DNA of 64,000 bases from Octopus sinensis (taxonomy: Eukaryota). Every line of letters begins with the position of its first letter. Position 1 is the first letter of the stretch. Below are positions 1,423 to 43,254 of the stretch, one piece after another. The position numbers and the translations under genes are program-made. Below the pieces are notes generated by a model. That model worked only from the letters and a program-made list of their open reading frames with translations, was not told the DNA's origin and made no database searches. The stretch lies in the NCBI RefSeq assembly GCF_006345805.1, contig NC_043013.1:35340001-35404000 (forward strand). Reading direction: 5' to 3'.

Positions 1423-1493
<71 letters not shown>

Positions 1494-1756
1494 CATATAT
1501 ATATATGCATATATATATATACATACATGTATGTGTATGTGTGTATAAGTTTGTCTGTCTGTGTTTGTCCCCCCAAAATGACTTTCCAACTGATGCTGGT
1601 GTGTTTACGTCCCCTTCACTTAGCGGTTCAGCAAAAGAGCCCAATAGAATAAGTACTAGGCTTACAAAGAATAAGTCCTGGGGTCGATTTGCTCGACTAA
1701 AAGGCGGTGCTCCAGCATGGCCGCAGTCAAATGACTGAAACAAATAAAAGAATAAA
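1271..1756 (+). mobile_element. SINE family A
   Basis: Well-preserved copy: ggttccgggttcagtcccactgcatggcaccttgggcaagtgtc...(TA)n...gactaaaaggcggtgctccagcatggccgcagtcaaatgactgaaac. Confidence 0.9.
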
Positions 1757-2174
1757 ACAACATGCATACATACATGCACACATATATACACATATATATA
1801 TACTTGTATTTAGAAAAATACAGAGACATAGTCAGATAGAGAAGAACATGAAGAGGAGTTACACAAGAGCTATTGATAATATTGTATACTATGGATATTA
1901 AGCATTATAATCATTAATAATCTCATGGTTTCATAAAATAAACGGCTTGAATTTTAATGACTATATACTAGTCTATAAATACTACCCAAAATCTGAAACA
2001 GACAGTGTCATAGAGTCACACACACACACCACAAATTCAAACATACACCACATAAAAAAAATTGTTTTAAATTTTATTTTTAAAAAATGCTCAACATTAA
2101 AAGAAATATAGCTATTGTTATATTAACTGTTGTTTGACACAAGTTTTCTTTCACCCTATTTTACGAGTTTTATT

Positions 2175-7294: not shown

Positions 7295-7670
7295 ATGATA
7301 CCACTGCTATCTCTTTTGCACACCACATTTGATACTTCTTATGCTCAACTTTCTATCAGAGCATTTACGCCGTCATGTATGCATACTGACATTACACATC
7401 CACCGGATCATACTAGCTTCATTTCTTTCAAGCCTACACATGTCCTCAGCAATCATGGCCCATGTTTCACTGCTGTGAAGCATAGCAGTTCACAGACATT
7501 CATCATACAGTCTACCTTTCATCCTGAGCAAGAGTCACTTAGTTGCCAGCAGAGGTAGGAGCTCCTTGAACTTTGCCCAGACTATTCTTATTCTAGACGC
7601 TACATTCTCAGAGCAACCACCCCCACTACAGTCTTGGTCACCTAGGTAGTGGAAGCTATTAACTACTTTT
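7295..7670 (-). pseudogene. RTE LINE reverse transcriptase fragment
   Basis: Minus strand reads SFHYLGD...RIRIVWAKFKELLPLL...KGRLYD...MLHSSETWA...RLERNEASMIRWMCNV, with stops; classic RTE RT C-terminal region. Confidence 0.85.
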
Positions 7671-7714
7671 AGTTTTTCTTCTGGCATGTGATGTGATGGA
7701 ATCTGTTTTCTGTA

Positions 7715-8012
7715 TGTATCATCATCATCATCATCATCATCATCATCGTTTAACGTTCACTTTCCATACTGGCAAGGGTTGGACTGTTTGGCTGAGGGCT
7801 TGCAAGCCAGAAGGCTCCACCAGGCTCCAATCTGATCTGGCGAAGTTTCTACAGCTGGATGCCCTTTGTAATGCCAACCACTCTGAAAGTGTAGTGGGGC
7901 TTTTATGTGCCACCTGCACAAGGGCCAGTCAGGCAGTAATGGCATCAGCCACGCTCAAATGATGCTTTTTATGGGCCACCTGCACAGGAGCCAGTCTGGC
8001 AACGACCATGCT
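7715..8012 (-). mobile_element. RTE LINE 3' UTR fragment with (GAT)n tail
   Basis: (CAT)n-cgtttaacgttcactttccat...ctacagctggatgccc..gccaaccactc; same family as 52900-53250. Confidence 0.8.
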
Positions 8013-8049: not shown

Positions 8050-8454
8050 GCTGCAAGCATGGCTGTGTGGTAAAAGGCTTACTTGCTAACCACAAAGTTC
8101 TGGGTTCAGCCCCACTGCATGGAAACTTGAGCACGTGTCTTCTACTATAGCCTTGGGTCAACCAAAGCTTTGCGAGTGGATTCGGTAGATGGAAACTGAA
8201 AGAATCCCGTCGTATATGTATACATATGTGTGTATGTGTGTATATATGTGTGTCTGTATTTGCCCCCCCTACGTCACTTGACAACTGATTTTGGTGCGTT
8301 TACATCCCCATAAATTAGCAGTTCGGCAGAAGAGACGCATAGAATAAGTACTGGGCTTACAAAGAATAAGTCCTGAGGTCGATCTTTTCGACTAAAGGTG
8401 GTGCTCCAGCATGGCTGCAATCAGATGACTGAAACAAGTAAAAGAATAAAAGAA
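8050..8454 (+). mobile_element. SINE family A
   Basis: Head ggctgtgtggtaa...; tail ctccagcatggctgcaatcagatgactgaaacaagtaaaagaataaaag. Confidence 0.85.
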
Positions 8455-8567
8455 TATATATATAGCATTCTTTAGAAAAACATAAATCCAGAGAAGAAGC
8501 AGGCTCTAAGAAGTATAGCACTCTATATTTATTACTGTAAACTGGCCCTTCACCAGGTTCAATAGTG

Positions 8568-8600
<33 letters not shown>

Positions 8601-9207
8601 ATGTGTTTGTGTGTGCTTATGTGTGTTTGTGTGTGGTTATATATGCATACATAATATCTGTGGCCTACATTATCTACTGTCTCCCTCCCTTATTAACTGG
8701 TAGATTACAATCTGAGGATGATTTGTCTGCTATTTCTAGCAAGTTGGGTGATAACATAGGCAGAAACTCCTTTTATTGGCTCATCCTCATTAAATGTGTT
8801 GAGGCTGATAGAGTACAAGCAGTGAAAATCCAGCCCTCTGTAAGTTCAAAGTACATATAGTTTTACTATGTCTGTCATGCTATGGTCAGTAAAGCATGAC
8901 ATTAGTTTCATATAAACTTTTTCAATTCCAATACAAAGCTCCCCTCCACGCTCTGGTGCACACAGCGTTTCATGTTCTTTTGTTTTGTTTTTGTAGCAGT
9001 TATGTTACAGTTAATCTTATACTTTAAGATTTTGTTACATTAGACTCATTTTTAATGTAGAAGTACTGTTGTATGATTCCTCTTAGCATTGGTTTTTACA
9101 TCTCTCTGTATCCTAATAGTCTGGTAGTTAGTTTTCCGATATTTTGTTTAGAAGTGTCAAACAAGTCCTGATTGACCTGGCATTTCATTAATTATAACAA
9201 TGAGTGC

Positions 9208-10447: not shown

Positions 10448-10522
10448 TTCCAGCGTAAAGACATAAATGTGAAACAAGGTGGAAAAAATAATTCTCAAAT
10501 ACTGGAGGTAGATCAGTATGCT

Positions 10523-10612
10523 TTATTAATAAAGCTGCAGAGACATCACAAAAACTGTTACTCAGAGTTTTATGTTCCTGTTCGTTGGACAGTTTTGGTT
10601 GACAATGGAGCA
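10523..10612 (-). mobile_element. Penelope-like terminal repeat fragment with decayed hammerhead motif
   Basis: Minus strand 10592-10555: CTGT CCAACGA ACAGGAACAT AAAA CTCTGAG TA ACAG; an inverted copy lies at 11005-11088. Confidence 0.6.
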
Positions 10613-11004: not shown

Positions 11005-11088
11005 CTATTCTCAACCAAACTGTCCAACAATGGGAACGTGAAACTCTGAGTAATAGTTTTTCTGATGTCTTTGCAACTTTATTAAAAA
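11005..11088 (+). mobile_element. Penelope-like terminal repeat fragment with decayed hammerhead motif
   Basis: 11020-11056: CTGT CCAACAA TGGGAACGT GAAA CTCTGAG TA ATAG. Confidence 0.6.
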
Positions 11089-11338
11089 AGTAAAAATATA
11101 CATATATATATTAATTAATCAATATAGGGTAGCAAAAAAAATTTTGTAGAATTCTTTTTGCCACCAGCGGCCTAGTGGGAAAAAATTAAATAGTCATAGA
11201 CCATTTTTAAGTTCAATATCAACAATCAAGAACGGCCATGATAGGCCATTCACCCACTAGAAATAACAGCCAAAGCTTCAACCGCAAATAAAGATCAATT
11301 CTGTAACAGGAGAAAATTTAAAAAACATTTACCCTGTA

Positions 11339-11445
11339 ATTTCTTGTACGATGCACCGTTTCATCTGCTGTTTAATGGTAAACTAACCTGATTAAATTAA
11401 ATCAAGCCAATCTTCCATAGGCCCTCAGATTCTTCAGCAAGAAAT
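11339..11445 (-). ncRNA. Type I hammerhead ribozyme, copy 1
   Basis: Minus strand: ATTTCTTG-CTGAAGA-ATCTG-[58 nt]-CAGAT-GAAA-CGGTGCATCG-TA-CAAGAAAT; 8-bp stem I, 5-bp stem II base, full core, GUA triplet. Confidence 0.85.
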
Positions 11446-11826
11446 AGCCAAGTCGGAACAGATATTTTCACGAGGCATTTCCGACCCTGCCAAGGTAATA
11501 TCTGACCTAAAATTTTCAAATCGTCGCACTCGCACCAAATTTATCGGCAGCAAATAAATATAAGCCGTCGATTCCATTACGGAATTAACCAGAAAATTCA
11601 TAATTAATCAATATAGGTAGCAAAAAAAATTTTGTAGAATTCTTTTTGCCACCAGCGGCCTAGTGGGAAAAAATTAAATAGTCATAGACCATTTTTAGTT
11701 CAACATCAACAATCAAGGAACGGCCATGATAGGCCATTCACCCACTAGAAATAACAGCCAAGCTTCAACCGCAAATAAAGATCAATTCCGTAAACAGGAG
11801 AAAATTTAAAAAACATTTACCCTGTA

Positions 11827-11933
11827 ATTTCTTGTACGATGCACCGTTTCATCTGCTGTTTAATGGTAAACTAACCTGATTAAATTAAATCAAGCCAATC
11901 TTCCATAGGCCCTCAGATTCTTCAGCAAGAAAT
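11827..11933 (-). ncRNA. Type I hammerhead ribozyme, copy 2
   Basis: Identical to copy 1. Confidence 0.85.
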
Positions 11934-12317
11934 AGCCAAGTCGGAACAGATATTTTCACGAGGCATTTCCGACCCTGCCAAGGTAATATCTGACCTAAAA
12001 TTTTCAAATCGTCGCACTCGCGCCAAATTATCGGCAGCAAATAAATATAAGCCGTCGATTCCATTACGGAATTAACCAGAAAATTCATAATTAATCAATA
12101 TAGGGTAGCAAAAAAAATTTTTTTAGAGATTCTTTTTGCCACCAGCGGCCTAGTGGGAAAAAATTAAATAGTCATAGGCCATTTTTAAGTTCAACATCAA
12201 CAATCAAGGAACGGCCATGATAGGCCATTCACCCACTAGAAATACAGCCAAGCTTCAACACGCAAATAAAGATCAATTCCGTAAACAGGAGAAAATTTAA
12301 AAAACATTTACCCTGTA

Positions 12318-12423
12318 ATTTCTTGTACGATGCACCGTTTCATCTGCTGTTTAATGGTAAACTAACCTGATTAAATAAATCAAGCCAATCTTCCATAGGC
12401 CCTCAGATTCTTCAGCAAGAAAT
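12318..12423 (-). ncRNA. Type I hammerhead ribozyme, copy 3
   Basis: Core and stems intact; 1-nt indel inside the stem II insertion. Confidence 0.85.
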
Positions 12424-12805
12424 AGCCAGTCGGAACAGATATTTTCACGAGGCATTTCCGACCCTGCCAAGGTAATATCTGACCTAAAATTTTCAAATCG
12501 TCGCACTCGCGCCAAATTTATCGGCAGCAAATAATATAAGCCGTCGATTCCATTACGGAATTAACCAGAAAATTCATAATTAATCAATATAGGGTATCAA
12601 AAAAATTTTGTAGAACTCTTTTTTGCCACCAGCGGCCTAGTGGGAAAAAATTAAATAGTCATAGACCATTTTTAAGTTCAACATCAACAATCAAGGAACG
12701 GCCATGATAGGCCATTCACCCCCTAGAAATAACAGCCAAAGCTTCAACCGCAAATAAAGATCAATTCCATAACAGGAGAAAAAAATTAAAAAACATTTAC
12801 CTGTA

Positions 12806-12911
12806 ATTTCTTGTACGATGCACCGTTTCATCTGCTGTTAATGGTAAACTAACCTGATTAAATTAAATCAAGCCAATCTTCCATAGGCCCTCAGATTCTT
12901 CAGCAAGAAAT
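12806..12911 (-). ncRNA. Type I hammerhead ribozyme, copy 4
   Basis: Core and stems intact; the array boundary (12916) is 5 nt from its stem I 5' arm. Confidence 0.85.
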
Positions 12912-12912
12912 A

Positions 12913-12946
<34 letters not shown>

Positions 12947-13789: not shown

Positions 13790-14070
13790 ATCATCATCAT
13801 CATCTAATGTCCATTTTCCATACTAGCATGGGTTGAATGATTTGACTGAGAACTGGTAAGCCAGGAGGCTGCACCAGGCACCAGTCTGATCTGACAGTGT
13901 TTCTACAGCTGGATACCCTTCCTAACACCAACCACTCCGAGAGTGTAGTAGGTACTTTTTACGTGCCACCACCAGGGGAGCCAATCAGACAGCACTGGCA
14001 TCAGCCACGTTCAGATGGTGCTTTTTATGTGCCACCAGCACAGGATCCACTCAGGGCAAGAGGGCTGGCA
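13790..14070 (-). mobile_element. RTE LINE 3' UTR fragment
   Basis: (CAT)n ctaatgtccattttccatactagcatgggttg...ctacagctggatacccttcctaacaccaaccactccgagagtgtagt. Confidence 0.8.
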
Positions 14071-14233
14071 TTGCTCAAGAACACAAAATGCATACCAGTC
14101 TGGGAATCGAACTCACAACATTACGATCATAAGCTTGATGCTCTAACCACTCGACACATATATACATATGTATTAGAAGAAATAAGGTACTCAGAAATCT
14201 GGATGGTTTTATATTTACAGATTTCTTAGTACC

Positions 14234-14614
14234 ATATTTCTTCTAATATGTAATACCTGTACATCACCTCCAAACCTTCTAATATACATATATATATAGG
14301 TGCAGGAGTGGCTGTGTGGTAAGAAGCTTGCTTCCCAATCACATGGTTCTGGGTTCAGTCACACTGCGTAGCACCTTTGGCAAGTGTCTTCTATTATAGC
14401 CTTGAGCTGAAAGAAGCCTGTTGAATATATATATATATAGCTCAAAGCTATAATAGAAGACACTTGCCCAAGGTGCTACGCAGTGTGACTGGACCCAGAA
14501 CCATGTGATTGGGTAGCAAGCTTCTTACTACACAGCCACTCCTGCACCTATATATATATATGTGTATTGGAAGGTTGGAGGTGATGTATAGGTATTATAT
14601 ATTAGAAGAAATAT
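14234..14614. repeat. Local inverted duplication (arms ~175 bp, 30-bp spacer) inside a SINE A copy
   Basis: 14234-14408 is the reverse complement of 14439-14614, including non-SINE flank; the SINE 3' half resumes at ~14615-14762. Confidence 0.9.
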
Positions 14615-15024
14615 TTACATCCCCGCAACTTAGCAGGTCAGCTAAAGAGACCAATAGAATAAGTACTAGGCTTACAAAGAATAAGTCCTGGGGTTGATTT
14701 GTTTGACTAAAGGTGGTGCTCCATCATGGTCACTGTCAAATGACTGAAACAAGTAAAAGAGTATATATATACATGTATATATATATAATATATACAATAT
14801 GTGTGCATGTGTTTCTGTGTACTCTTGTCTCGACATCTCATGATGATTGTACGCCATAAGTGTGATCTTGCTTGATTCCATGAAAATATGCCCACCAACC
14901 ATGGCAAAATGTTACCTTGCTTGAATACAGGTGAGGGTTAGTGACAGGAAAGGCCTCTGTCCATTGAAAATCTGTTCAAAGAAACTACACTGGAATTATG
15001 CAAGTATGGGAAAGCGGACGTTTA

Positions 15025-16390: not shown

Positions 16391-16827
16391 AGAGAAATTA
16401 AGGCCAACAGACCAGATATAGTTGTCAGAGATCATGAAGAAAAAAATGCTTTCTAATTGATGTATCAATACCGGCAGATGACAACGGTCTAAAAGAAATG
16501 AAAGGAGAAACTCTCAAAATACAAAGACCTGGAAATAGAGGTAACCAGAATGTGGAATCTGAAAACAGAAACAATTCCTATCATAGTAGGTGCATTAGGC
16601 ATGATAAAAAAATATTCAGACAAATACATAACAAAAACACCAGCAGACTTACACAACACATATAACATACAGAAAATTGCACTACTAGGCCACTGCACAC
16701 ATCCTACGCAGAACACTTTCCATACAATAACCATAGAGCATCACAACAAATCACAGCACATACCCAAGGCACACAGAGCTGCGCTCGGTAGTGAAGTGTG
16801 AAAGCACGCTATAAAATAAAACTACTG

Positions 16828-26409: not shown

Positions 26410-26820
26410 TTATTGTTATTATTATTTGGTACGCTCCATGCCGGTGGCACGTAAAAAGCACCATTCTTGTGTGATTGTCACCAGTGTCACCCTACTGGCA
26501 CTTGTGCCGGTGGCACATGGAAAACATTTGCGCGAGGTTGTTGCCAGTGCCGCTGGTTTGGCTCCTGTGCAGGTGGCACATAAAAAACACCATTTGAGTG
26601 TGGCCATTGCCAGTATCACCTGAGTGGCCCTCATGCCGGTGGCATGTAAAAGCACCCAGTATACTCTCGGGGTGGTTGGTATTAGGAATGGCATCCAGCT
26701 GTAGAAACTCTGCCAGATCAGATTGGAGCCCGATGCAGCCATCTGGTACGCCAACCCTCAGTCAAATAGTCCAACTCATGCTAGCATGGAAAGTGGACGT
26801 TAAATGATGATGATGATGAT
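26410..26820 (+). mobile_element. RTE LINE 3' UTR with repeated tgccggtggcacgtaaaaagcacc motif and (GAT)n tail
   Basis: About four copies of the internal motif, then ggcatccagctgtagaaac..ggacgttaaatgatgatgat. Confidence 0.85.
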
Positions 26821-28340: not shown

Positions 28341-28695
28341 AGGTGCAGGAGTGGCTGTGTGGTAAGCAGCTTGCTTACCAACCACATGGTTCCGGGTTTA
28401 GTCTCACTGCATGGCGCCTTGGGCAAGTGTTTTCTTATATATCCTCAGGCTGATAAAAGCTTTGTGAGTGGATTTGGTAGAGAGAAAATTAAAGAAGTCC
28501 ATCGTGTATATATATGTGTGTGTGTGTGTGTGTGTTTACACCCCCCGTAAATTAATGGTTCAGCAAAAGAGACTGATAGAATAAGTACTAGTCTTACAAA
28601 GAATAAGTCCTGGGATCGATTTGCTTGACTAAGTGTGGTACCCCAGCATGGCCACAGTCAAATGACTGAAAAAAACAAATAGAATAATAAAAGAA
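28341..28695 (+). mobile_element. SINE family A
   Basis: aggtgcaggagtggctgtgtggtaagcagcttgcttaccaaccacatgg...aaatgactgaaa. Confidence 0.85.
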
Positions 28696-28714
28696 CATAT
28701 ATATATACATATAC

Positions 28715-28768
<54 letters not shown>

Positions 28769-29098
28769 CAAGAGACAGACAGACAGACATAGATATAGAT
28801 ATAGCACACTCTCATGCATACATATGTATGTATGAAAGGGTGCTGCAAAGTTCCCAGCTTTGGAAGAAAGAAAATATATGAGGCTCAATTAATTACCAGG
28901 AACACCTCTCGTATACACACTGACACATGTACATACATACATATCTTTATGTATATATGTACATAAATATATTCTTCCTAAATAATGGATCTACAAATGC
29001 AATATCCCTGCATATCTCACATCTATTTTCATTCCTCCACTTCACCCTCTATTTCGTATCTTATCTAAATTAACTATTACTTAACCATTTTCTCACAC

Positions 29099-29367: not shown

Positions 29368-29671
29368 TATATATATGTATATTTATATATACACATTTGT
29401 GTATGTGTATGCATTTTCATCCTCTAGTATGGTCTTGTTTTATATGTAAGTATACACACACACATAGACATGCACACAAACACAAACTTTCACAAACATG
29501 CATGTGTGTTCCCTTCTGTTTTTAATTGATAAATATCTTCCGTAAAGAAGGGAGCTGATTTCTAACAAAGATACCAAGCTCCTTTGCTAGAATGTAGATA
29601 AGAAAGAGAAATTCATATTTTAAACTTGGGAAAAGCCTTGCACATTCTTACTGTTCCAGTTACAGATTGTG

Positions 29672-31130
29672 CAGTAATCCCTCGCCATATCACAGTTCAC
29701 CTATTGTGCCTTCACTACATCACAGTTCACTTATTACACACTCAGTACATCGCAGTTCACCTATTGTGCACTTAGTACATCACAGTTTACCTATCACAAA
29801 TTTAATACATCATGGTTCACCTACTGCACACTCAGTACATCATAGTTCACCTATCACGCCTCAGTACATCATAGTTCATCTATTGCATACTCAGTACATC
29901 ATGGTTCACCTATCACACACTCAGTACATCATAGTTCACCTATCGCGCACTCAGTACATCATGTTTCATCTATTGCATACTCAGTACATCATAGTTCACC
30001 TATCGCGCACTCAGTACATCATGATTCATCTATTGCATACTCAGTACATCATAGTTCACCTATCGCACACTCAGTACATCATGGTTCATCTATTGCATAC
30101 TCAGTACTTCATGGTTCACCTATCACACACTCAGTACATCATATTTCACCTATTGCACACTCAGTACATCATGGTTTACCTATCGCACACTCAGTACATC
30201 ATGGTTCATCTATTGCATACTCAGTACATCATGGTTCACCTATCGCGCACTCAGTATATCCTGGTTCATCTATTGCATACTCAGTACATCATAGTTCACC
30301 TATCGCGCACTCAGTACATCATGGTTCATCTATTGCATACTCAGTACATTATGGTTCACCTATCACACACTCAGTACATCATAGTTCACCTATCGCGCAC
30401 TCAGTACATCATGGTTCATCTATTGCATACTCAGTACATCATAGTTCACCTATTGCGCACTCAGTACATCATGGTTCATCTATTGCATACTCAGTACATC
30501 ATAGTTCACCTATCGCGCACTCAGTACATCATGGTTCATCTATTGCATACTCAGTACATCATAGTTCACCTATCGCGCACTCAGTACATCATGGTTCATC
30601 TATTGCATACTCAGTACATCATATTTCACCTATCGCGCACTCAGTACATCGTGGTTCATCTATTGCATACTCAGTACATCATGGTTCACCTATCGCACAC
30701 TCAGTACATCATGGTTCACCTATCGCACACTCAGTACATCATGGTTCACCTATTGCACACTCAGTACATCATAGTTCATCTATATGTATACTCAGTACAT
30801 CATGGTTCACCTATCGCACACTCAGTACATTGCGGTTCACCTACTGCACACTCAGTACATGACAGTTCACCTACTGCCATTGCGGTTCACCTACCACACA
30901 CTCAGTACATCACGGTTAACCTATCGTGCACTCAGTACATTGCTGTCCACCTATCACACTCTCAGTACATTGCAGATTTTTCTAGCTAATATATGTAAAT
31001 TTATATCATGGAATCCTGAGTATATTGTGGGTTTCTGCAGCCAATAGGTATTTATATTTTTTGAGATTTTAATCATTCTTAGATTGGGGGGCTTTGGAAC
31101 ATAACACCCACAATAAACAAGGGTTTACTG
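29672..31130. mobile_element. pogo/Tigger-type MITE swollen by a 30-bp minisatellite (~43 copies, 29685-30975)
   Basis: TIRs CAGTAATCCCT / AGGGTTTACTG; the unique 3' part aligns with 16930-17070; unit tcagtacatcatagttcacctatcgcgcac. Confidence 0.85.
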
Positions 31131-36519: not shown

Positions 36520-37060
36520 GGTTGACTACTGTGTGTTGAAGTATGCAGTGTGGTTCTCAGTTAAGCAAGGTGTATGTGTCTTGAACACATTGTCAGTGAA
36601 ACACTTCTAGCTTTTTGACCATTCTTTATGCTGTCATAGGTCTGTTTGAGTAGGGATAAACTACAAGAATTAATATCTAATTTATTGGAAATGATTGCTG
36701 ACTTGGAACCAGAAAAATCCAAATTGTAACAAACATTGCTTCATAATTCAAATTATATTATAGCAATCATTCGTAGCTTTGCCAAAGAGAAATCTATGGT
36801 GGCTTCAAAGGTGACCATATTAAGTGGGTTTCACTTAGGCAAGGCTGAAAATGTAATATAATTTGAATTAGAAAGCCTTCTTTGACATATTATGAAATTA
36901 ATATTATTCTCATCTAACAGCAAATCAGTAACCTGTTCACCATGAATAATTAGGATATATATTATAAGTTCAGCACTTTTTATGCAAATGAATGGTCGGG
37001 GTTGAGACATATCATAGCCTAGGCTATGAGATGGACAGTACACACAGCTAAAGAGAGCCA
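36520..37060 (-). pseudogene. Ancient CR1/L2/Jockey-type LINE reverse transcriptase remnant
   Basis: Minus strand motifs in the expected order: SLGYD..KSAEL..SNSNYITFSALP..LQFGF..YDSIKNGQKARSV; many stops and shifts. Confidence 0.5.
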
Positions 37061-37154
37061 GTAGGGTGAAACAGTGGCTAGGTCAATGATTTCTCGATTT
37101 TCAACAGTCATCAGTTAACTATGCTCTACACACAAGAATATATATATATATATA

Positions 37155-37326
37155 AATAAATGAAAGAATGGAGTCGAACGACGATTTTAACAAAATTCCT
37201 TAACTCTCCACACATGTTTCGAAGGCTGCATATTCCTAATATTAGGAATATGCAGCCTTCGAAACATGTGTCAAGAGTAAAGGAATTTTGTTAAAATCGT
37301 CGTTCGACTCCATTCTTTCATTTATT
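37155..37326. repeat. 172-bp spacerless palindrome derived from a hammerhead-bearing terminal repeat
   Basis: Centre 37240/37241; 86-bp arms with 3 mismatches; contains GAAA CATGTG TC AAGAG. Confidence 0.9.
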
Positions 37327-37523
37327 CATAATTAAAAAAAAACACAAATTTACACACGAGAACACGGGATCCCCATCCTTGGCATATAGCTTCAACCGTG
37401 TTTCCTGACGTGAATTTGCTACCCAGGTATTGATTAACCGAATTATCCATACTAGGATAATTCATTCACCTTCTTATATATATATATATATTTTCCCTCT
37501 CCATCTGTTTTCTGTCCTCGTTC

Positions 37524-37561
37524 CTTTCTCTGTAGAAGAGCATATGCTCAAAACATCAAAG
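37524..37561 (+). ncRNA. Decayed hammerhead-like motif (Penelope-like terminal repeat)
   Basis: CTTT..CTGTAGA A GAGC ATAT GCTC AAAA CAT C AAAG; a sister copy lies at 38710-38745 (-). Confidence 0.4.
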
Positions 37562-37957
37562 ATTTCTTCCATTTCTTCCAGAGCATAAAATTAATAAACC
37601 CTGTTTGTTGTTCCTTCACTTGCCACAACCTTTTGTTTTTTGTTTTGATTTTTGTATTATTTTCAACCAAACGTGTGTGTGTGTGTGTACATATATATAT
37701 GTGTGTGTATATGAGTACATATACATGTGTGTGTAGAAGTCTCCATTCTCTTTACTATTATTAATATCAATTTTATATCCTCAAGATAAATTTTATTGTC
37801 CAGTGAAGAGTACACAGAATTATCCATTGGAAGAATTCATGGAGCATCTAAATGTAGCCACAGACATGAAATACCGATTGTTGTGGTTAACCGTTAACTG
37901 GAACATAACTGAGAGCTATTACGGTATTCACCTGGATAATATATCCCTCCAAACTCA

Positions 37958-38002
<45 letters not shown>

Positions 38003-38003
38003 C

Positions 38004-38167
38004 TTTACTACCCACAAAGAGCTAAACACAGAGGGGACAAACAAGGACAGACAAAGCGATTAAGTCGATTCCATCAGCCCCAGTGCGTAACTGGTAATTA
38101 ATTTATCAACCCCGAAAGGATGAAAGAACTAGATGGGCTACGTAATAGATAATTGTTTGTGGATTTG

Positions 38168-38214
<47 letters not shown>

Positions 38215-38356
38215 ATTATTATTATTACTATTATTATTATTATTACTATTATCATCATCATCATCATCGGCGGAATTTGAACCCAGAACGTAACGGAAGA
38301 CGAAATACGGCTACGCATTTCGCCCGGCATGCTACTGTTTCTGCCAGCTCGCCGCC
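38004..38356 (-). mobile_element. SINE family B with a 141-bp templated insertion (38127-38267)
   Basis: The SINE is split between gaaaggatgaaag and cggcggaatttgaacc; the insert is the reverse complement of 40593-40734. Confidence 0.85.
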
Positions 38357-38359
38357 TAA

Positions 38360-38396
<37 letters not shown>

Positions 38397-38486
38397 ATTT
38401 CGGGGTCAGTTTTGATTTTTTTTTGCCAAATATACATTCGTTCTTCACATGTTTATTACAGTTATTATATATATATATATATATAT

Positions 38487-38619
<133 letters not shown>

Positions 38620-38709
38620 CAGGAAGAATTTACAAAAAAACAAAAGACGAAAATGAGTGTGTAAAGAACAAACAGATGTATTAGTTTAACGCTTGGGAAG
38701 TCAGAAAGT

Positions 38710-38745
38710 CTTTTATGTTTCGAGCCTACGTTCTTTGACAGAAAG
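38710..38745 (-). ncRNA. Decayed hammerhead-like motif
   Basis: Minus strand CTTT CTGTCAA A GAAC GTAG GCTC GAAA CAT A AAAG. Confidence 0.45.
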
Positions 38746-38852
38746 GAACACAGAAATAAACAGGGAGAGAAATTAGAAGAAGGTATATCAGCTAATAATC
38801 TATCATGGCGAAGTTAAATATATATATTTATATATCTTTAACTTTCTGCCTG

Positions 38853-38980
<128 letters not shown>

Positions 38981-39368
38981 AAGAAATAGATAGATAGATA
39001 GATAGATAAACAGACAGACTGACAGAAAGTTATATATATTTATATATATTATATTTTTCACGTATATAATTATAAAGATATAATTACAGTTAAGGGCTAG
39101 TGGAAATGACCAGTACCAATGCTAGAAATAGGTGTCAAATACCTAATTATATCTTTATAATTATATATGTGAGAAAATTAATATTGCCTCTATGGTCATT
39201 TCTAAATGCTAGGCCACTGATATAATCATTTTATGATTATATCCTTATCTTATAAATATGTGTGTGTGTGTGTGTATTTATACATACATATATACATACA
39301 TCATCATCATCATCATCATCATCATCATTTAGCGTCCGTTTTCCATGCTAGCATGGGTTGGACATATG

Positions 39369-39400
<32 letters not shown>

Positions 39401-39493
39401 TATATATACATATATATATACATATATATACATATATATATATATACATATATATACATATATATATATACATATATATACATATATATATAC

Positions 39494-39544
<51 letters not shown>

Positions 39545-39548
39545 ATAT

Positions 39549-39581
<33 letters not shown>

Positions 39582-40125
39582 ACATATACATATATATATA
39601 CATATATATACATATATATACATATGTATATATATATACATATACATATATACATATGCACAAATGCATATAATGTTATATACATACATACATGTATTGA
39701 CGTTTACAAAAAAAAAGGTTTATCGACAGTGAAATCAAAGTTTTAGCTTACTCACCTTCGTCAGAAATTCTAATGGACTGAGCAAAGTGAAACTTTGAGT
39801 GCTCAACCAATGCTTATTTTATCAACCCCCAAAAAGCATTTGACCAGGCGTGCTGATGGTTCTGCCACCTTGTTGTATTAATAATAACAATAATTCTTTC
39901 TACTATAGGCACAAGGCCTGACATTTTGAAGGAGGAACTAAGTCGATTACATCAACCCCAGTACTCAACTGGTACTTATTCTAGCAACTCCAAAAGGATG
40001 AAAGGCAAAGTAGACCCTGCAGCACTTGAACTCAGGACATAAAGATAGATGAAATATCATTAACCATTTCACCCGGAATGCTAACAATTCTGCCAGCTTG
40101 CTGCCTTAATAATAATAATAATAAC

Positions 40126-42649: not shown

Positions 42650-42994
42650 CCCATTAGCATTCAAACCAACCATATCCAGCTCAAATATTCTACCTGTTTT
42701 ATGTTCAAACAAGCCTGATCTGGCATCTTGCACTTATCCTACAAGGCCATTCTAACAATAAAACAAGCAAACAATTGAAATCTCAAAGCTACAAGATAAT
42801 GCATGATTAATCAAAATAATCCTTTCTACAATTGGCATAAGGCCTGGAAGTTGTGGGGAGGGGGCAAGTTGATTACATCATCCCCAGTGAATTACTGGTA
42901 CTTGCTTAATTGACCCTGAAAGAAAGAAAAGCAAATCAAAATAATGTGAATAAATAAGCATTACCTTTGACTGTGTAACCTGGATGCTAAAGGA
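42650..42994. mobile_element. piggyBac-type MITE with nested SINE B fragment
   Basis: TTAA at 42646 and 42995; same family as 9293-9513 (opposite orientation); SINE fragment 42821-42933 flanked by the 12-bp duplication aatcaaaataat. Confidence 0.75.
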
Positions 42995-43254
42995 TTAAAC
43001 TTTCCCTGTGGAACACATTTTTATTCACACCCAACAAAATCTTGCAATCATCATCACCATCATCATTTAACGTCTGCTTTCCATGCTAGCATGGAATGGA
43101 CGATTAGACTGAGGTCTGGCAAGCCAGTAGGCTGCACCAGGCTTCCATCTGATCTGGCAGAGTTTCTACAGCTGGATGCACTTCCTAGAGCAGATAAAGA
43201 TTTAGAATGAATTACCTTTATTAATTAACCTATGAACTAAGTCTTTCTTTTTTA

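What the first reader, a model, noticed from the sequence alone, without database searches (positions are those of the whole stretch)
11112..12916. Putative octopus retrozyme: ~489-bp tandem array with an intact hammerhead ribozyme in every unit
Seen: ~3.7 near-identical units with no ORF. Each has, on the minus strand, ATTTCTTG-CTGAAGA-ATCTG...CAGAT-GAAA-CGGTGCATCG-TA-CAAGAAAT, i.e. all conserved core nucleotides, a perfect 8-bp stem I and a GUA site. Predicted cuts follow 12814, 12326, 11835 and 11347, releasing 488, 491 and 488-nt monomers. The array's minus-strand 5' end starts only 5 nt before the first ribozyme. About 15 CpGs per unit survive while neighbouring repeats are CpG-decayed, so it looks young. 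Established: type I hammerhead tandem repeats (newt satellite 2, schistosome Sm-alpha, coral and mussel retrozymes) self-cleave into monomers that circularise, and are thought to be retrotransposed by autonomous elements such as PLEs. Inference: this is a non-autonomous, circular-RNA-producing retroelement with a larger monomer than typical metazoan retrozymes. I know of no cephalopod description but cannot search.
Basis: partly seen in the sequence, partly recalled or inferred. Interest (0 to 1): 0.92.

Follow-up and report, generated by a model that had tools for sequence, protein, structure and literature searches.

The report
Hammerhead-ribozyme tandem repeat in octopus-like DNA
A 1.8-kb stretch of non-coding DNA, probably from an octopus, repeats a 489-base unit that carries a complete self-cutting "hammerhead" RNA motif, so it looks like a new example of a known class of mobile elements (retrozymes) that make small circular RNAs, though no cutting, RNA or other copies could be shown here.

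Summary
Window 11112-12916 is a 488-bp tandem array (3.7 copies, 96% match). The minus strand carries four type I hammerhead motifs. The predicted cuts follow 12814, 12326, 11835 and 11347, giving monomers of 488, 491 and 488 nt.

A permissive hammerhead descriptor finds only these four sites in 128 kb and 0.01 per shuffled window. Four properties that the descriptor did not ask for also fit:
- Helix III is self-complementary and forms a 12-bp "double hammerhead".
- The RNA folds well only on the minus strand.
- The motif varies less than the rest of the unit.
- CpG observed/expected is 0.93 against 0.40 in the rest of the window.

The motif is nonetheless atypical. It has A10.1-U11.1 instead of G-C and a 58-nt hairpin inside helix II. 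Rfam Hammerhead_1 is the best match but scores only 15.9 bits against a 34-bit cut-off.

The best reading is a young non-LTR retrozyme of the kind known from coral, mussel and salamander, so a new member of a known kind. Its size is not unusual, since published families span 51-972 bp. Self-cleavage, circular RNA, mobility and genome copy number are untested. No other copy could be retrieved. Interest is moderate, about 0.35.

The parts
11112..12916 (-). Tandem array of 3.7 units of about 489 bp, the retrozyme-like element. It is non-coding, 36.5% GC, with CpG observed/expected 0.93.
   Evidence: TRF; composition; ORFs; unit alignment.
12806..12911 (-). Hammerhead copy 1 (106 nt). The cut is predicted after A17 at 12814. 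The array starts 5 nt upstream.
12318..12423 (-). Hammerhead copy 2 (106 nt). The cut is predicted after 12326. It has a 1-nt deletion in the terminal loop of the helix II hairpin.
11827..11933 (-). Hammerhead copy 3 (107 nt), used as the reference. Helix I 5' strand 11933-11926; core CUGAAGA 11925-11919; helix II 11918-11914 paired with 11855-11851; G12-A14 11850-11848; helix III plus loop 11847-11836; A17 11835; helix I 3' strand 11834-11827.
   Evidence: (full-length Rfam RF00163 alignment in the same register).
11339..11445 (-). Hammerhead copy 4 (107 nt). The cut is predicted after 11347.
11856..11913 (-). 58-nt insertion in helix II, shown for the reference copy. It folds into an imperfect hairpin: a 4-bp stem and a 14-bp stem with 5 G-U pairs, closed by a 6-nt loop. 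The same insertion is present in all four copies.
   Evidence: The plus-strand equivalent does not fold.
11836..11847 (-). Helix III segment ACGGUGCAUCGU. It is self-complementary with two G-U pairs. As a hairpin it is worth -0.2 kcal/mol; as a 12-bp duplex between two copies it is worth -17.5 kcal/mol.
12326..12813 (-). Predicted released monomer A (488 nt).
11835..12325 (-). Predicted released monomer B (491 nt). Folded as a circle its minimum free energy is -135.3 kcal/mol, z = -4.1.
11347..11834 (-). Predicted released monomer C (488 nt).
12917..12944 (.). (TA)n microsatellite directly abutting the high-coordinate end of the array; possible target site.
11095..11111 (.). TA-rich microsatellite remnant (ATATACATATATATAT) directly abutting the low-coordinate end of the array.

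Best explanation
The array is a young copy of a non-autonomous, non-LTR retrozyme, that is, a hammerhead-bearing tandem repeat.

**Shown here**
- Each 489-bp unit encodes on the minus strand a type I hammerhead with the complete unpaired core, an 8-bp helix I and a 5-bp helix II extended by a 58-nt hairpin.
- Helix III is weak and self-complementary.
- The RNA is strongly structured only in that orientation.

**Inferred mechanism**
1. Read-through transcription of the minus strand gives a multimeric RNA. RNA polymerase II is the more likely enzyme, because the RNA has T6 and T8 runs that would stop polymerase III.
2. Neighbouring hammerheads pair through helix III into a double hammerhead and cut after GUA. 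[quoted passage not shown]
3. A host tRNA-type ligase circularises the monomers.
4. The compact circle is copied round and round by the reverse transcriptase of an autonomous element, most likely a Penelope-like element.
5. The tandem cDNA is integrated, here into a (TA)n microsatellite.
For: - **Exact motif and spacing:**
- **Specificity of the descriptor:** 4 hits in the window, all in the array, against 0.01 per shuffled window.
- **Rfam:** When the 131-nt stretch is searched alone, RF00163 Hammerhead_1 is the top family. The model aligns in full (positions 1-45 of 45) in the same register.
- **Energetics of the fold:** The hammerhead fold costs only 0.5 kcal/mol more than the minimum free energy structure.
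- **Double hammerhead:** Cofolding two copies gives this structure as the minimum, -79.3 against -63.0 kcal/mol for two separate monomers. Published metazoan type I hammerheads show the same short helix III with a palindromic loop and act as dimers (PMC4209133, PMC7229834).
- **Strand-specific structure:** The hammerhead domain folds to -36.6 kcal/mol (z = -3.0) on the minus strand and -19.9 (z = -0.2) on the plus strand. The circular monomer folds to -135.3 (z = -4.1) against -92.9 for the plus strand.
- **Conservation within the array:** 2 of 107 hammerhead columns vary. Both are 1-nt indels in unpaired loops of the helix II extension. Outside the motif 41 of 387 columns vary (Fisher p = 0.003).
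- **Class features met:** The element has low GC and no conserved ORF, no Pfam domain was found in the ORFs scanned between about 8 and 25 kb of the window, and no terminal repeats flank the array.
- **Youth:** 0.6-2.1% substitutions between units, and CpG observed/expected of 0.93 against 0.40.
- **Target site:** (TA)n lies on both flanks. (TA)n is a preferred target of Naiad Penelope-like elements (PMC8557442).
- **Possible partner:** Octopus vulgaris has 336 recently active Penelope-like insertions (PMC13282606).
Against: - No Rfam hit at gathering score, nor at E<=10 on 2 kb. The best score is 15.9 bits against the 34-bit cut-off.
- A10.1-U11.1 replaces the G10.1-C11.1 pair described as highly conserved (PMC4209133).
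- The 58-nt helix II insert and the uninterrupted 8-bp helix I leave no recognisable loop 1/loop 2 contacts, so cleavage may be slow or absent.
- Only one array is visible. There is no other copy in 64 kb and none in any searchable collection. Dispersal, covariation and mobility are therefore unshown.
- No target-site duplication can be called. The shared 13-mer ATATACATATATA occurs 75 times in the window.
- 4.5% of the window is (TA)>=5, so TA flanks are only weak evidence.
- No Penelope-like element or minimal hammerhead is present in the window.
- Many differences between units are homopolymer indels that could be assembly errors.
Confidence: 0.72

Rival explanations
1. The hammerhead is genuine, but the array is only a local satellite or minisatellite. 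It would have been amplified at the DNA level by unequal crossing-over or replication slippage. It would not now be transcribed, circularised or retrotransposed.
For: Only one array is visible, and no relatives were retrievable. No target-site duplication, poly(A) tail or adjacent reverse transcriptase is present. The window is extremely rich in tandem repeats of all periods.
Against: A complete core, an untouched motif in all four copies, and strand-specific folding of the whole 490-nt unit all suggest recent selection at the RNA level. The array is truncated at arbitrary points at both ends and is embedded in (TA)n, which looks like an insertion. In every published case that was tested, such repeats are expressed as circular RNA (PMC7229834).
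Confidence: 0.15
2. An ordinary AT-rich minisatellite happens to contain a hammerhead-like string by chance. There is no ribozyme.
For: The Rfam score is below threshold. The closing pair is the atypical A10.1-U11.1, and no tertiary-contact loops are recognisable. Extrapolating to a genome of about 2.7 Gb gives hundreds of permissive chance hits and a few at 17 helix bp (my estimate).
Against: For a given 489-bp unit the chance expectation is about 1e-6 (scaled). The following were not part of the search pattern, yet all fit a hammerhead: the palindromic helix III giving a 12-bp dimer helix, G-U-rich strand-specific folding, low variation in the motif, and the tandem context typical of the class.
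Confidence: 0.06
3. The array is a fragment of an autonomous Penelope-like element, namely tandemised pseudo-LTRs carrying the element's own hammerhead. It is not a separate non-autonomous element.
For: Penelope-like elements carry type I hammerheads in their pseudo-LTRs, form tandem structures and prefer microsatellite targets (PMC4209133, PMC8557442). In Xenopus, retrozymes are related in sequence to pseudo-LTRs (10.64898/2026.07.22.740005).
Against: The ORFs scanned between about 8 and 25 kb of the window gave no reverse transcriptase, GIY-YIG or any other Pfam domain. The period is 489 bp rather than the spacing of about 3 kb between flanking repeats described for Penelope-like elements. 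The motif has a 4-bp helix III with a tetraloop, not the minimal form with little or no helix III. No minimal hammerhead occurs in the window.
Confidence: 0.05

Closest known systems
Metazoan non-LTR retrozymes (Acropora millepora 220-240 bp, Mytilus galloprovincialis 350-390 bp, Ambystoma mexicanum 330/350 bp; Cervera & de la Pena 2020, PMC7229834)
   Same: A type I hammerhead in every unit of a short, non-coding tandem repeat with low GC. No LTR. The monomer is predicted to be highly self-paired, with the hammerhead left nearly free to form. Like the mussel family (also a mollusc), the archetypal loop 1/loop 2 nucleotides are not recognisable.
   Different: The 489-bp unit is above the 2020 range but inside the 51-972 bp range of the 2026 survey. 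Helix II carries a 58-nt hairpin instead of a 4-6-nt loop. The closing pair is A10.1-U11.1. Genome copy number, expression and circular RNA are unknown here.
Newt/salamander satellite 2 hammerhead and other 'double hammerheads' (Forster et al. 1988, as cited in PMC4209133; HHR_Amex1/2 in PMC7229834)
   Same: Helix III is weak and capped by a palindromic tetraloop (UGCA). Two copies can therefore build a long intermolecular helix III, here 12 bp at -17.5 kcal/mol. This predicts poor cleavage as a monomer and good cleavage in multimeric transcripts.
   Different: Helix III here has 4 pairs including a G-U, against 1-2 pairs in salamanders. The host phylum, unit sequence and helix II architecture differ. 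No shared sequence beyond the core was shown.
Schistosoma Sm-alpha hammerhead repeat (as cited in PMC4209133)
   Same: An invertebrate tandem or dispersed repeat of a few hundred bp that encodes a type I hammerhead.
   Different: From my own knowledge, Sm-alpha is described as SINE-like with a polymerase III promoter. Here the minus-strand RNA contains T6 and T8 runs that would stop polymerase III, and no tRNA-like part is present. Box A and box B were not searched systematically.
Penelope-like element pseudo-LTR minimal hammerheads (PMC4209133)
   Same: Type I topology, palindromic helix III region, a larger than usual helix II, a predicted dimeric mode of action, and association with microsatellite target sites.
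   Different: Minimal hammerheads have almost no helix III, a helix I of 4-5 bp, an extra unpaired base before stem II and a conserved G10.1-C11.1. They flank a reverse transcriptase/endonuclease ORF. None of this applies here.
Rfam RF00163 Hammerhead_1
   Same: It is the best-scoring Rfam family for the 131-nt stretch. The model aligns in full, positions 1-45, with the same core and helices.
   Different: 15.9 bits against a gathering score of 34. The 58-nt insert in loop 2, the 6-nt insert in loop 3 and the A-U closing pair are penalised. No hit appears on larger search spaces.

Membership tests
Hammerhead ribozyme, type I | Conserved unpaired core C3 U4 G5 A6 N7 G8 A9 / G12 A13 A14, an A15.1-U16.1 pair, and H17 at the cut site | tested here: met
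   CUGAAGA ... GAAA ... U-A(17), then C1.1, identical in all four copies. The cleavage triplet is GUA.
Hammerhead ribozyme, type I | Three helices around the core, with helix I open-ended | tested here: met
   Helix I is 8 bp, extended by CUUG/CAGG beyond a small internal loop. Helix II is 5 bp plus a hairpin. Helix III is 4 bp plus a UGCA loop. The hammerhead fold is -31.0 against a minimum free energy of -31.5 kcal/mol.
Hammerhead ribozyme, type I | G10.1-C11.1 pair closing helix II (highly conserved, PMC4209133) | tested here: not met
   The pair is A10.1-U11.1 in all four copies (alignment).
Hammerhead ribozyme, type I | Score at or above Rfam RF00163's gathering threshold (34 bits) | tested here: not met
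   No hit at gathering score or at E<=10 on 2 kb. It scores 15.9 bits, E = 0.22, when 131 nt are searched alone.
Hammerhead ribozyme, type I | Tertiary contacts between loop 1 and loop 2 | tested here: inconclusive
   Internal loops exist after 8 bp of helix I and after 5 bp of helix II. No canonical loop nucleotides are recognisable. The mussel retrozyme hammerheads also lack them and still cleave (PMC7229834).
Hammerhead ribozyme, type I | Site-specific self-cleavage | not testable with these tools
   Needs in vitro transcription of monomer and dimer constructs.
Dimeric ('double') hammerhead | Weak helix III with a palindromic loop that allows an extended intermolecular helix III | tested here: met
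   ACGGUGCAUCGU is self-complementary. The hairpin is -0.2 and the duplex -17.5 kcal/mol. The cofold minimum is the double hammerhead, -79.3 against -63.0.
Metazoan non-LTR retrozyme | Type I hammerhead in all units of a tandem repeat of a few hundred bp | tested here: met
   3.7 units of 488-491 bp, four motifs. This is within the published 51-972 bp range.
Metazoan non-LTR retrozyme | Non-coding, low GC (<45-50%), no LTRs | tested here: met
   The longest ORF is 67 aa and is not conserved between units. GC is 36.5%. No long direct repeats flank the array. Primer-binding site and polypurine tract were not searched specifically.
Metazoan non-LTR retrozyme | Monomer RNA predicted to be stable and highly self-paired | tested here: met
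   The circular minimum free energy is -130 to -140 kcal/mol, with 63-67% of bases paired. For unit B z = -4.1, and the opposite strand gives -92.9.
Metazoan non-LTR retrozyme | Multiple arrays dispersed in the genome (mobility), with target-site duplications when present | not testable with these tools
   No cephalopod genome collection is available. The window holds one array only. Searches elsewhere gave nothing. A target-site duplication cannot be called in TA-rich flanks.
Metazoan non-LTR retrozyme | Expression as linear and circular monomer RNA | not testable with these tools
   No RNA data are accessible.
Metazoan non-LTR retrozyme | Co-occurrence with autonomous Penelope-like elements in the same genome | not tested
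   None in the window. From the literature only: O. vulgaris has 336 recently active Penelope-like insertions (PMC13282606), and cephalopods carry Naiad remnants (PMC8557442).
Penelope-like element (autonomous) / pseudo-LTR minimal hammerhead | Hammerhead-bearing repeats flanking a reverse transcriptase plus GIY-YIG ORF; minimal helix III | tested here: not met
   No Pfam domain in the ORFs scanned between about 8 and 25 kb of the window. No hits with the minimal-hammerhead descriptor. The period is 489 bp.

The most novel reading that the evidence does not exclude
This could be a cephalopod-specific retrozyme lineage with two unusual features. First, the hammerhead would stay catalytically active despite an A10.1-U11.1 closing pair. 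Second, the 58-nt G-U-rich helix II arm would be a functional module, for example a handle for the mobilising reverse transcriptase or for a ligase. Such a lineage might yield abundant circular RNAs of about 490 nt in octopus tissues, perhaps including the nervous system, where retroelement activity has been reported.
Probability: 0.12. Interest if true: 0.6.

Novelty: new member of a known kind. Interest (0 to 1): 0.35.

Why it matters
If confirmed, the documented host range of non-LTR retrozymes would extend to cephalopods. They are so far characterised in cnidarians, a bivalve, amphibians and other vertebrates, and reported from several invertebrate phyla. Cephalopod genomes are rich in transposons and active Penelope-like elements, and their RNA biology is closely studied.

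It would also add a natural hammerhead with two unusual features: an A-U pair at 10.1-11.1 and a long helix II arm. That would help define what the motif tolerates and improve search models, because Rfam's model misses it.

It is not a new mechanism. The class, its dimeric hammerheads and its proposed life cycle are already described.

Tried and rejected
1. **Rfam at gathering score on the whole window, and at E<=10 on 2 kb.** No hammerhead hit appeared. Only the 131-nt search recovered RF00163, and below threshold. The other weak hits (microRNA families on the TA microsatellite, RalA, WT1-AS) are noise.
2. **Finding other copies through spurious ORFs in the 5.8-billion-protein collection.** The 67-aa ORF gave no candidate. 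A six-frame pseudo-protein of 1.4 units gave 5450 word candidates, none with E<=0.001.
3. **Exact DNA patterns from both halves of the ribozyme.** Nothing in the metagenome contigs (two scans) or the viral contigs. No animal genome collection is available.
4. **Diverged copies of the unit elsewhere in the window.** blastn with word size 7 and nhmmer found nothing above noise.
5. **Target-site duplication.** ATATACATATATA lies on both sides of the array, but it occurs 75 times in the window, so I rejected it.
6. **tRNA-like or SINE-like origin.** ARAGORN found nothing. T6 and T8 runs argue against polymerase III multimers.
7. **Autonomous partner nearby.** Pfam scans of the long ORFs, and of ORFs between about 8 and 25 kb, gave no reverse transcriptase or endonuclease. 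A minimal-hammerhead descriptor gave no hits.
8. **A ribozyme on the plus strand.** Neither the descriptor nor Rfam found one.
Full report
**1.

Tandem Repeats Finder reports one array at 11112-12916, with period 488, 3.7 copies and 96% matches. Read on the minus strand, the 20-mer ATTTCTTGCTGAAGAATCTG occurs exactly four times and nowhere else in the window, even with 3 mismatches allowed.

The full motifs lie at 12911-12806, 12423-12318, 11933-11827 and 11445-11339. A17 of the GUA triplet is at 12814, 12326, 11835 and 11347, so the predicted monomers are 488, 491 and 488 nt.

The array starts 5 nt before the first helix I. The longest ORF is 67 aa, and frameshifts between units break it. CpG observed/expected is 0.93 in the array and 0.40 elsewhere, and the middle unit holds 17 CpG.

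**2. The motif is more than chance**

I wrote a deliberately permissive type I descriptor. It requires CUGANGA, GAAA, U-H, helix I of at least 5 bp, helix II of at least 4 bp and helix III of at least 2 bp. It allows G-U pairs and up to 110 nt between the core and GAAA.

On both strands of the window it finds only the four array copies, each with 8 + 5 + 4 helix pairs. In 100 dinucleotide-preserving shuffles it gave 0.01 hits per 128 kb, and the single hit had 13 helix pairs. Scaled to one 489-bp unit, the expectation at the observed quality is of the order of 1e-6. Scaled to a whole genome of about 2.7 Gb, a few chance matches of this quality are conceivable. I therefore looked for properties that the pattern did not ask for.

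**3. Independent properties**

- **Helix III.** The segment ACGGUGCAUCGU is self-complementary. As a hairpin it is worth -0.2 kcal/mol. As a duplex between two copies it is 12 bp and -17.5 kcal/mol. Cofolding two hammerhead domains gives the double hammerhead as the minimum free energy structure, at -79.3 against -63.0 kcal/mol for two separate monomers. Published metazoan type I hammerheads have the same short helix III capped by a palindromic loop and act as dimers in tandem transcripts (PMC4209133; PMC7229834).
- **Strand-specific folding.** The 133-nt hammerhead domain folds to -36.6 kcal/mol (z = -3.0, 1 of 200 shuffles as good) on the minus strand. On the plus strand it folds to -19.9 (z = -0.2). 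The 14-bp stem of the helix II arm contains five G-U pairs, which would be A-C mismatches on the other strand.
- **Whole monomer.** Folded as a circle, the monomers reach -130 to -140 kcal/mol. Unit B gives -135.3 (z = -4.1), and the plus strand gives -92.9. Helices I and II persist in that structure, and the hammerhead fold of the isolated domain costs only 0.5 kcal/mol more than the minimum. This matches the published remark that metazoan retrozyme circles leave the hammerhead nearly free to form (PMC7229834).
- **Variation between units.** Only 2 of 107 hammerhead columns vary. Both are 1-nt deletions in unpaired loops of the helix II arm. Outside the motif 41 of 387 columns vary (Fisher p = 0.003). 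With 3.7 copies and clustered indels this is suggestive only.

**4. Where the motif is atypical**

Rfam finds no hammerhead at gathering score on the window or at E<=10 on 2 kb. When 131 nt are searched alone, RF00163 Hammerhead_1 becomes the top family.

The penalties come from a 58-nt insertion in loop 2, a 6-nt insertion in loop 3, and an A-U pair at 10.1-11.1. Canonical hammerheads have a highly conserved G-C there (PMC4209133).

Helix I is an uninterrupted 8 bp, followed by a small internal loop and a CUUG/CAGG extension. No canonical loop 1/loop 2 nucleotides are recognisable. The mussel retrozyme hammerheads also lack these contacts and cleave about eight times more slowly than the coral one (PMC7229834). 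"Intact hammerhead" is thus right for the unpaired core, but activity is an open question.

**5. Context**

- **Local environment.** The window is AT-rich (33.9% GC), CpG-depleted and full of microsatellites and dispersed short repeats.
- **Neighbouring ORFs.** The long ORFs, and ORFs between about 8 and 25 kb of the window, gave no Pfam domain apart from one sub-threshold Pentapeptide match on the 30-bp minisatellite ORF. There is no tRNA, no other copy of the unit and no minimal hammerhead of the Penelope-like type.
- **Host.** A retroelement-like ORF fragment at 16502-16798 has as its best named relative an Octopus bimaculoides protein, at 85% identity. An octopod origin is therefore plausible but not proven.
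- **Flanks.** The array is embedded in TA microsatellite: (TA)n at 12917-12944 and ATATACATATATATAT at 11095-11111. (TA)n is a preferred target of Naiad Penelope-like elements, and such elements in general favour microsatellites (PMC8557442). However, 4.5% of this window is (TA)>=5. The shared 13-mer is also too common to count as a target-site duplication. This is therefore weak support for insertion.

**6. Age**

Units differ by 0.6-2.1% substitutions and by 5-13 small indels per pair, many of them in homopolymer runs. Three of the roughly twelve distinct substitutions are transitions at CpG sites: TACGG to TATGG, TACGG to TACAG, and GGCGCG to GGTGCG. This suggests that the array is subject to methylation-driven decay that has only just begun.

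A rough date can be had by assuming that all units were identical at insertion and using the scaling quoted for Octopus vulgaris, in which a Jukes-Cantor distance of 0.09 corresponds to about 25 million years (PMC13282606). A distance of about 0.6% from the common ancestor then suggests an age of the order of 1-3 million years. This is an inference.

**7. Mechanism**

The best-supported reading is a non-LTR retrozyme. The proposed steps are:
1. The minus strand is transcribed into multimers. Polymerase III is unlikely because of the T6 and T8 runs.
2. Adjacent hammerheads pair through helix III and cut after GUA.
3. A host ligase circularises the monomers of 488-491 nt.
4. A reverse transcriptase from an autonomous element copies the circle repeatedly.
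5. The tandem cDNA integrates.

Only the sequence and folding properties are shown here. Each of these steps is inferred from the published life cycle (PMC7229834) and from the link between retrozymes and Penelope-like elements (10.64898/2026.07.22.740005). A plausible partner exists in octopus: 336 recently active Penelope-like insertions in O. vulgaris (PMC13282606).

**8. Comparison and novelty**

All sequence-level defining features of metazoan non-LTR retrozymes are met. Those that need a genome or RNA data (dispersal, expression, circles) could not be tested.

The unit length is not exceptional, since published consensus lengths run from 51 to 972 bp. I found no paper describing a cephalopod retrozyme. 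The giant squid genome paper does list 235 Hammerhead_1 loci without further analysis, and a mollusc retrozyme (mussel) is well characterised.

I therefore class this as a new member of a known kind. It has a modest twist in hammerhead architecture: the long helix II arm and the A-U closing pair.

**9. Limits**

No animal genome collection or RNA data were available, and every attempt to retrieve relatives failed. There is therefore no covariation evidence and no copy-number estimate. An assembly artefact in unit number cannot be excluded.

I give 0.72 to the retrozyme reading, 0.15 to a genuine hammerhead satellite that is not mobile, 0.06 to a chance motif, and 0.05 to a fragment of a Penelope-like element.

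Noticed in passing
window 10521-10578 and 11033-11090: An inverted repeat of 58 nt, 88% complementary, with 454 nt between the arms. The space between holds only ATC, TCT and TAT microsatellites. The right arm ends 21 nt from the low-coordinate end of the hammerhead array. It may be a foldback or MITE-like element.
   Followed up: no
window 14347-14408 and 14439-14500: A near-perfect hairpin with 62-nt arms, 95% complementary, separated by 30 nt. Its nature is unknown.
   Followed up: no
window 29695-30877: A 30-bp minisatellite of 39 copies at 82% match. Its period is a multiple of three, and it keeps a 440-aa ORF open (29667-30989, +). Pfam gives only a weak, sub-threshold Pentapeptide match.
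   Followed up: partly
window 16502-16798 (+): A 99-aa stop-free frame (KEKLSKYKDLEIEVTRMWNLK...) with 64 relatives in public data. The best named one is an Octopus bimaculoides uncharacterized protein at 85% identity. It is probably a retroelement ORF fragment, and it is the only evidence for the host taxon.
   Followed up: partly
window, many sites, e.g. 1432-1809 (-), 8360-8689 (-), 14675-14911 (-), 28597-28884 (-); and 7663-7959 (+), 13846-14226 (+), 26495-26761 (-), 42971-43207 (+): Two recurring translated signatures (..FQSFDCGHAGAPP..IDPRTYSL and ..RLQSDLAEFLQLDALPNTNHSESV..) show that at least two dispersed short repeat families, SINE-like, populate the window in both orientations.
   Followed up: no
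whole window: There are 153 runs of (TA)>=5 covering 4.5% of the window. Overall GC is 33.9% and CpG observed/expected is 0.42. A second bin with high CpG observed/expected (0.87-0.93) lies at about 36900-39600.
   Followed up: no
literature (PMC6962438): The giant squid genome paper reports 235 Rfam Hammerhead_1 loci among its 'cis-regulatory elements' without any analysis. These may be cephalopod retrozymes or Penelope-like hammerheads awaiting description.
   Followed up: partly
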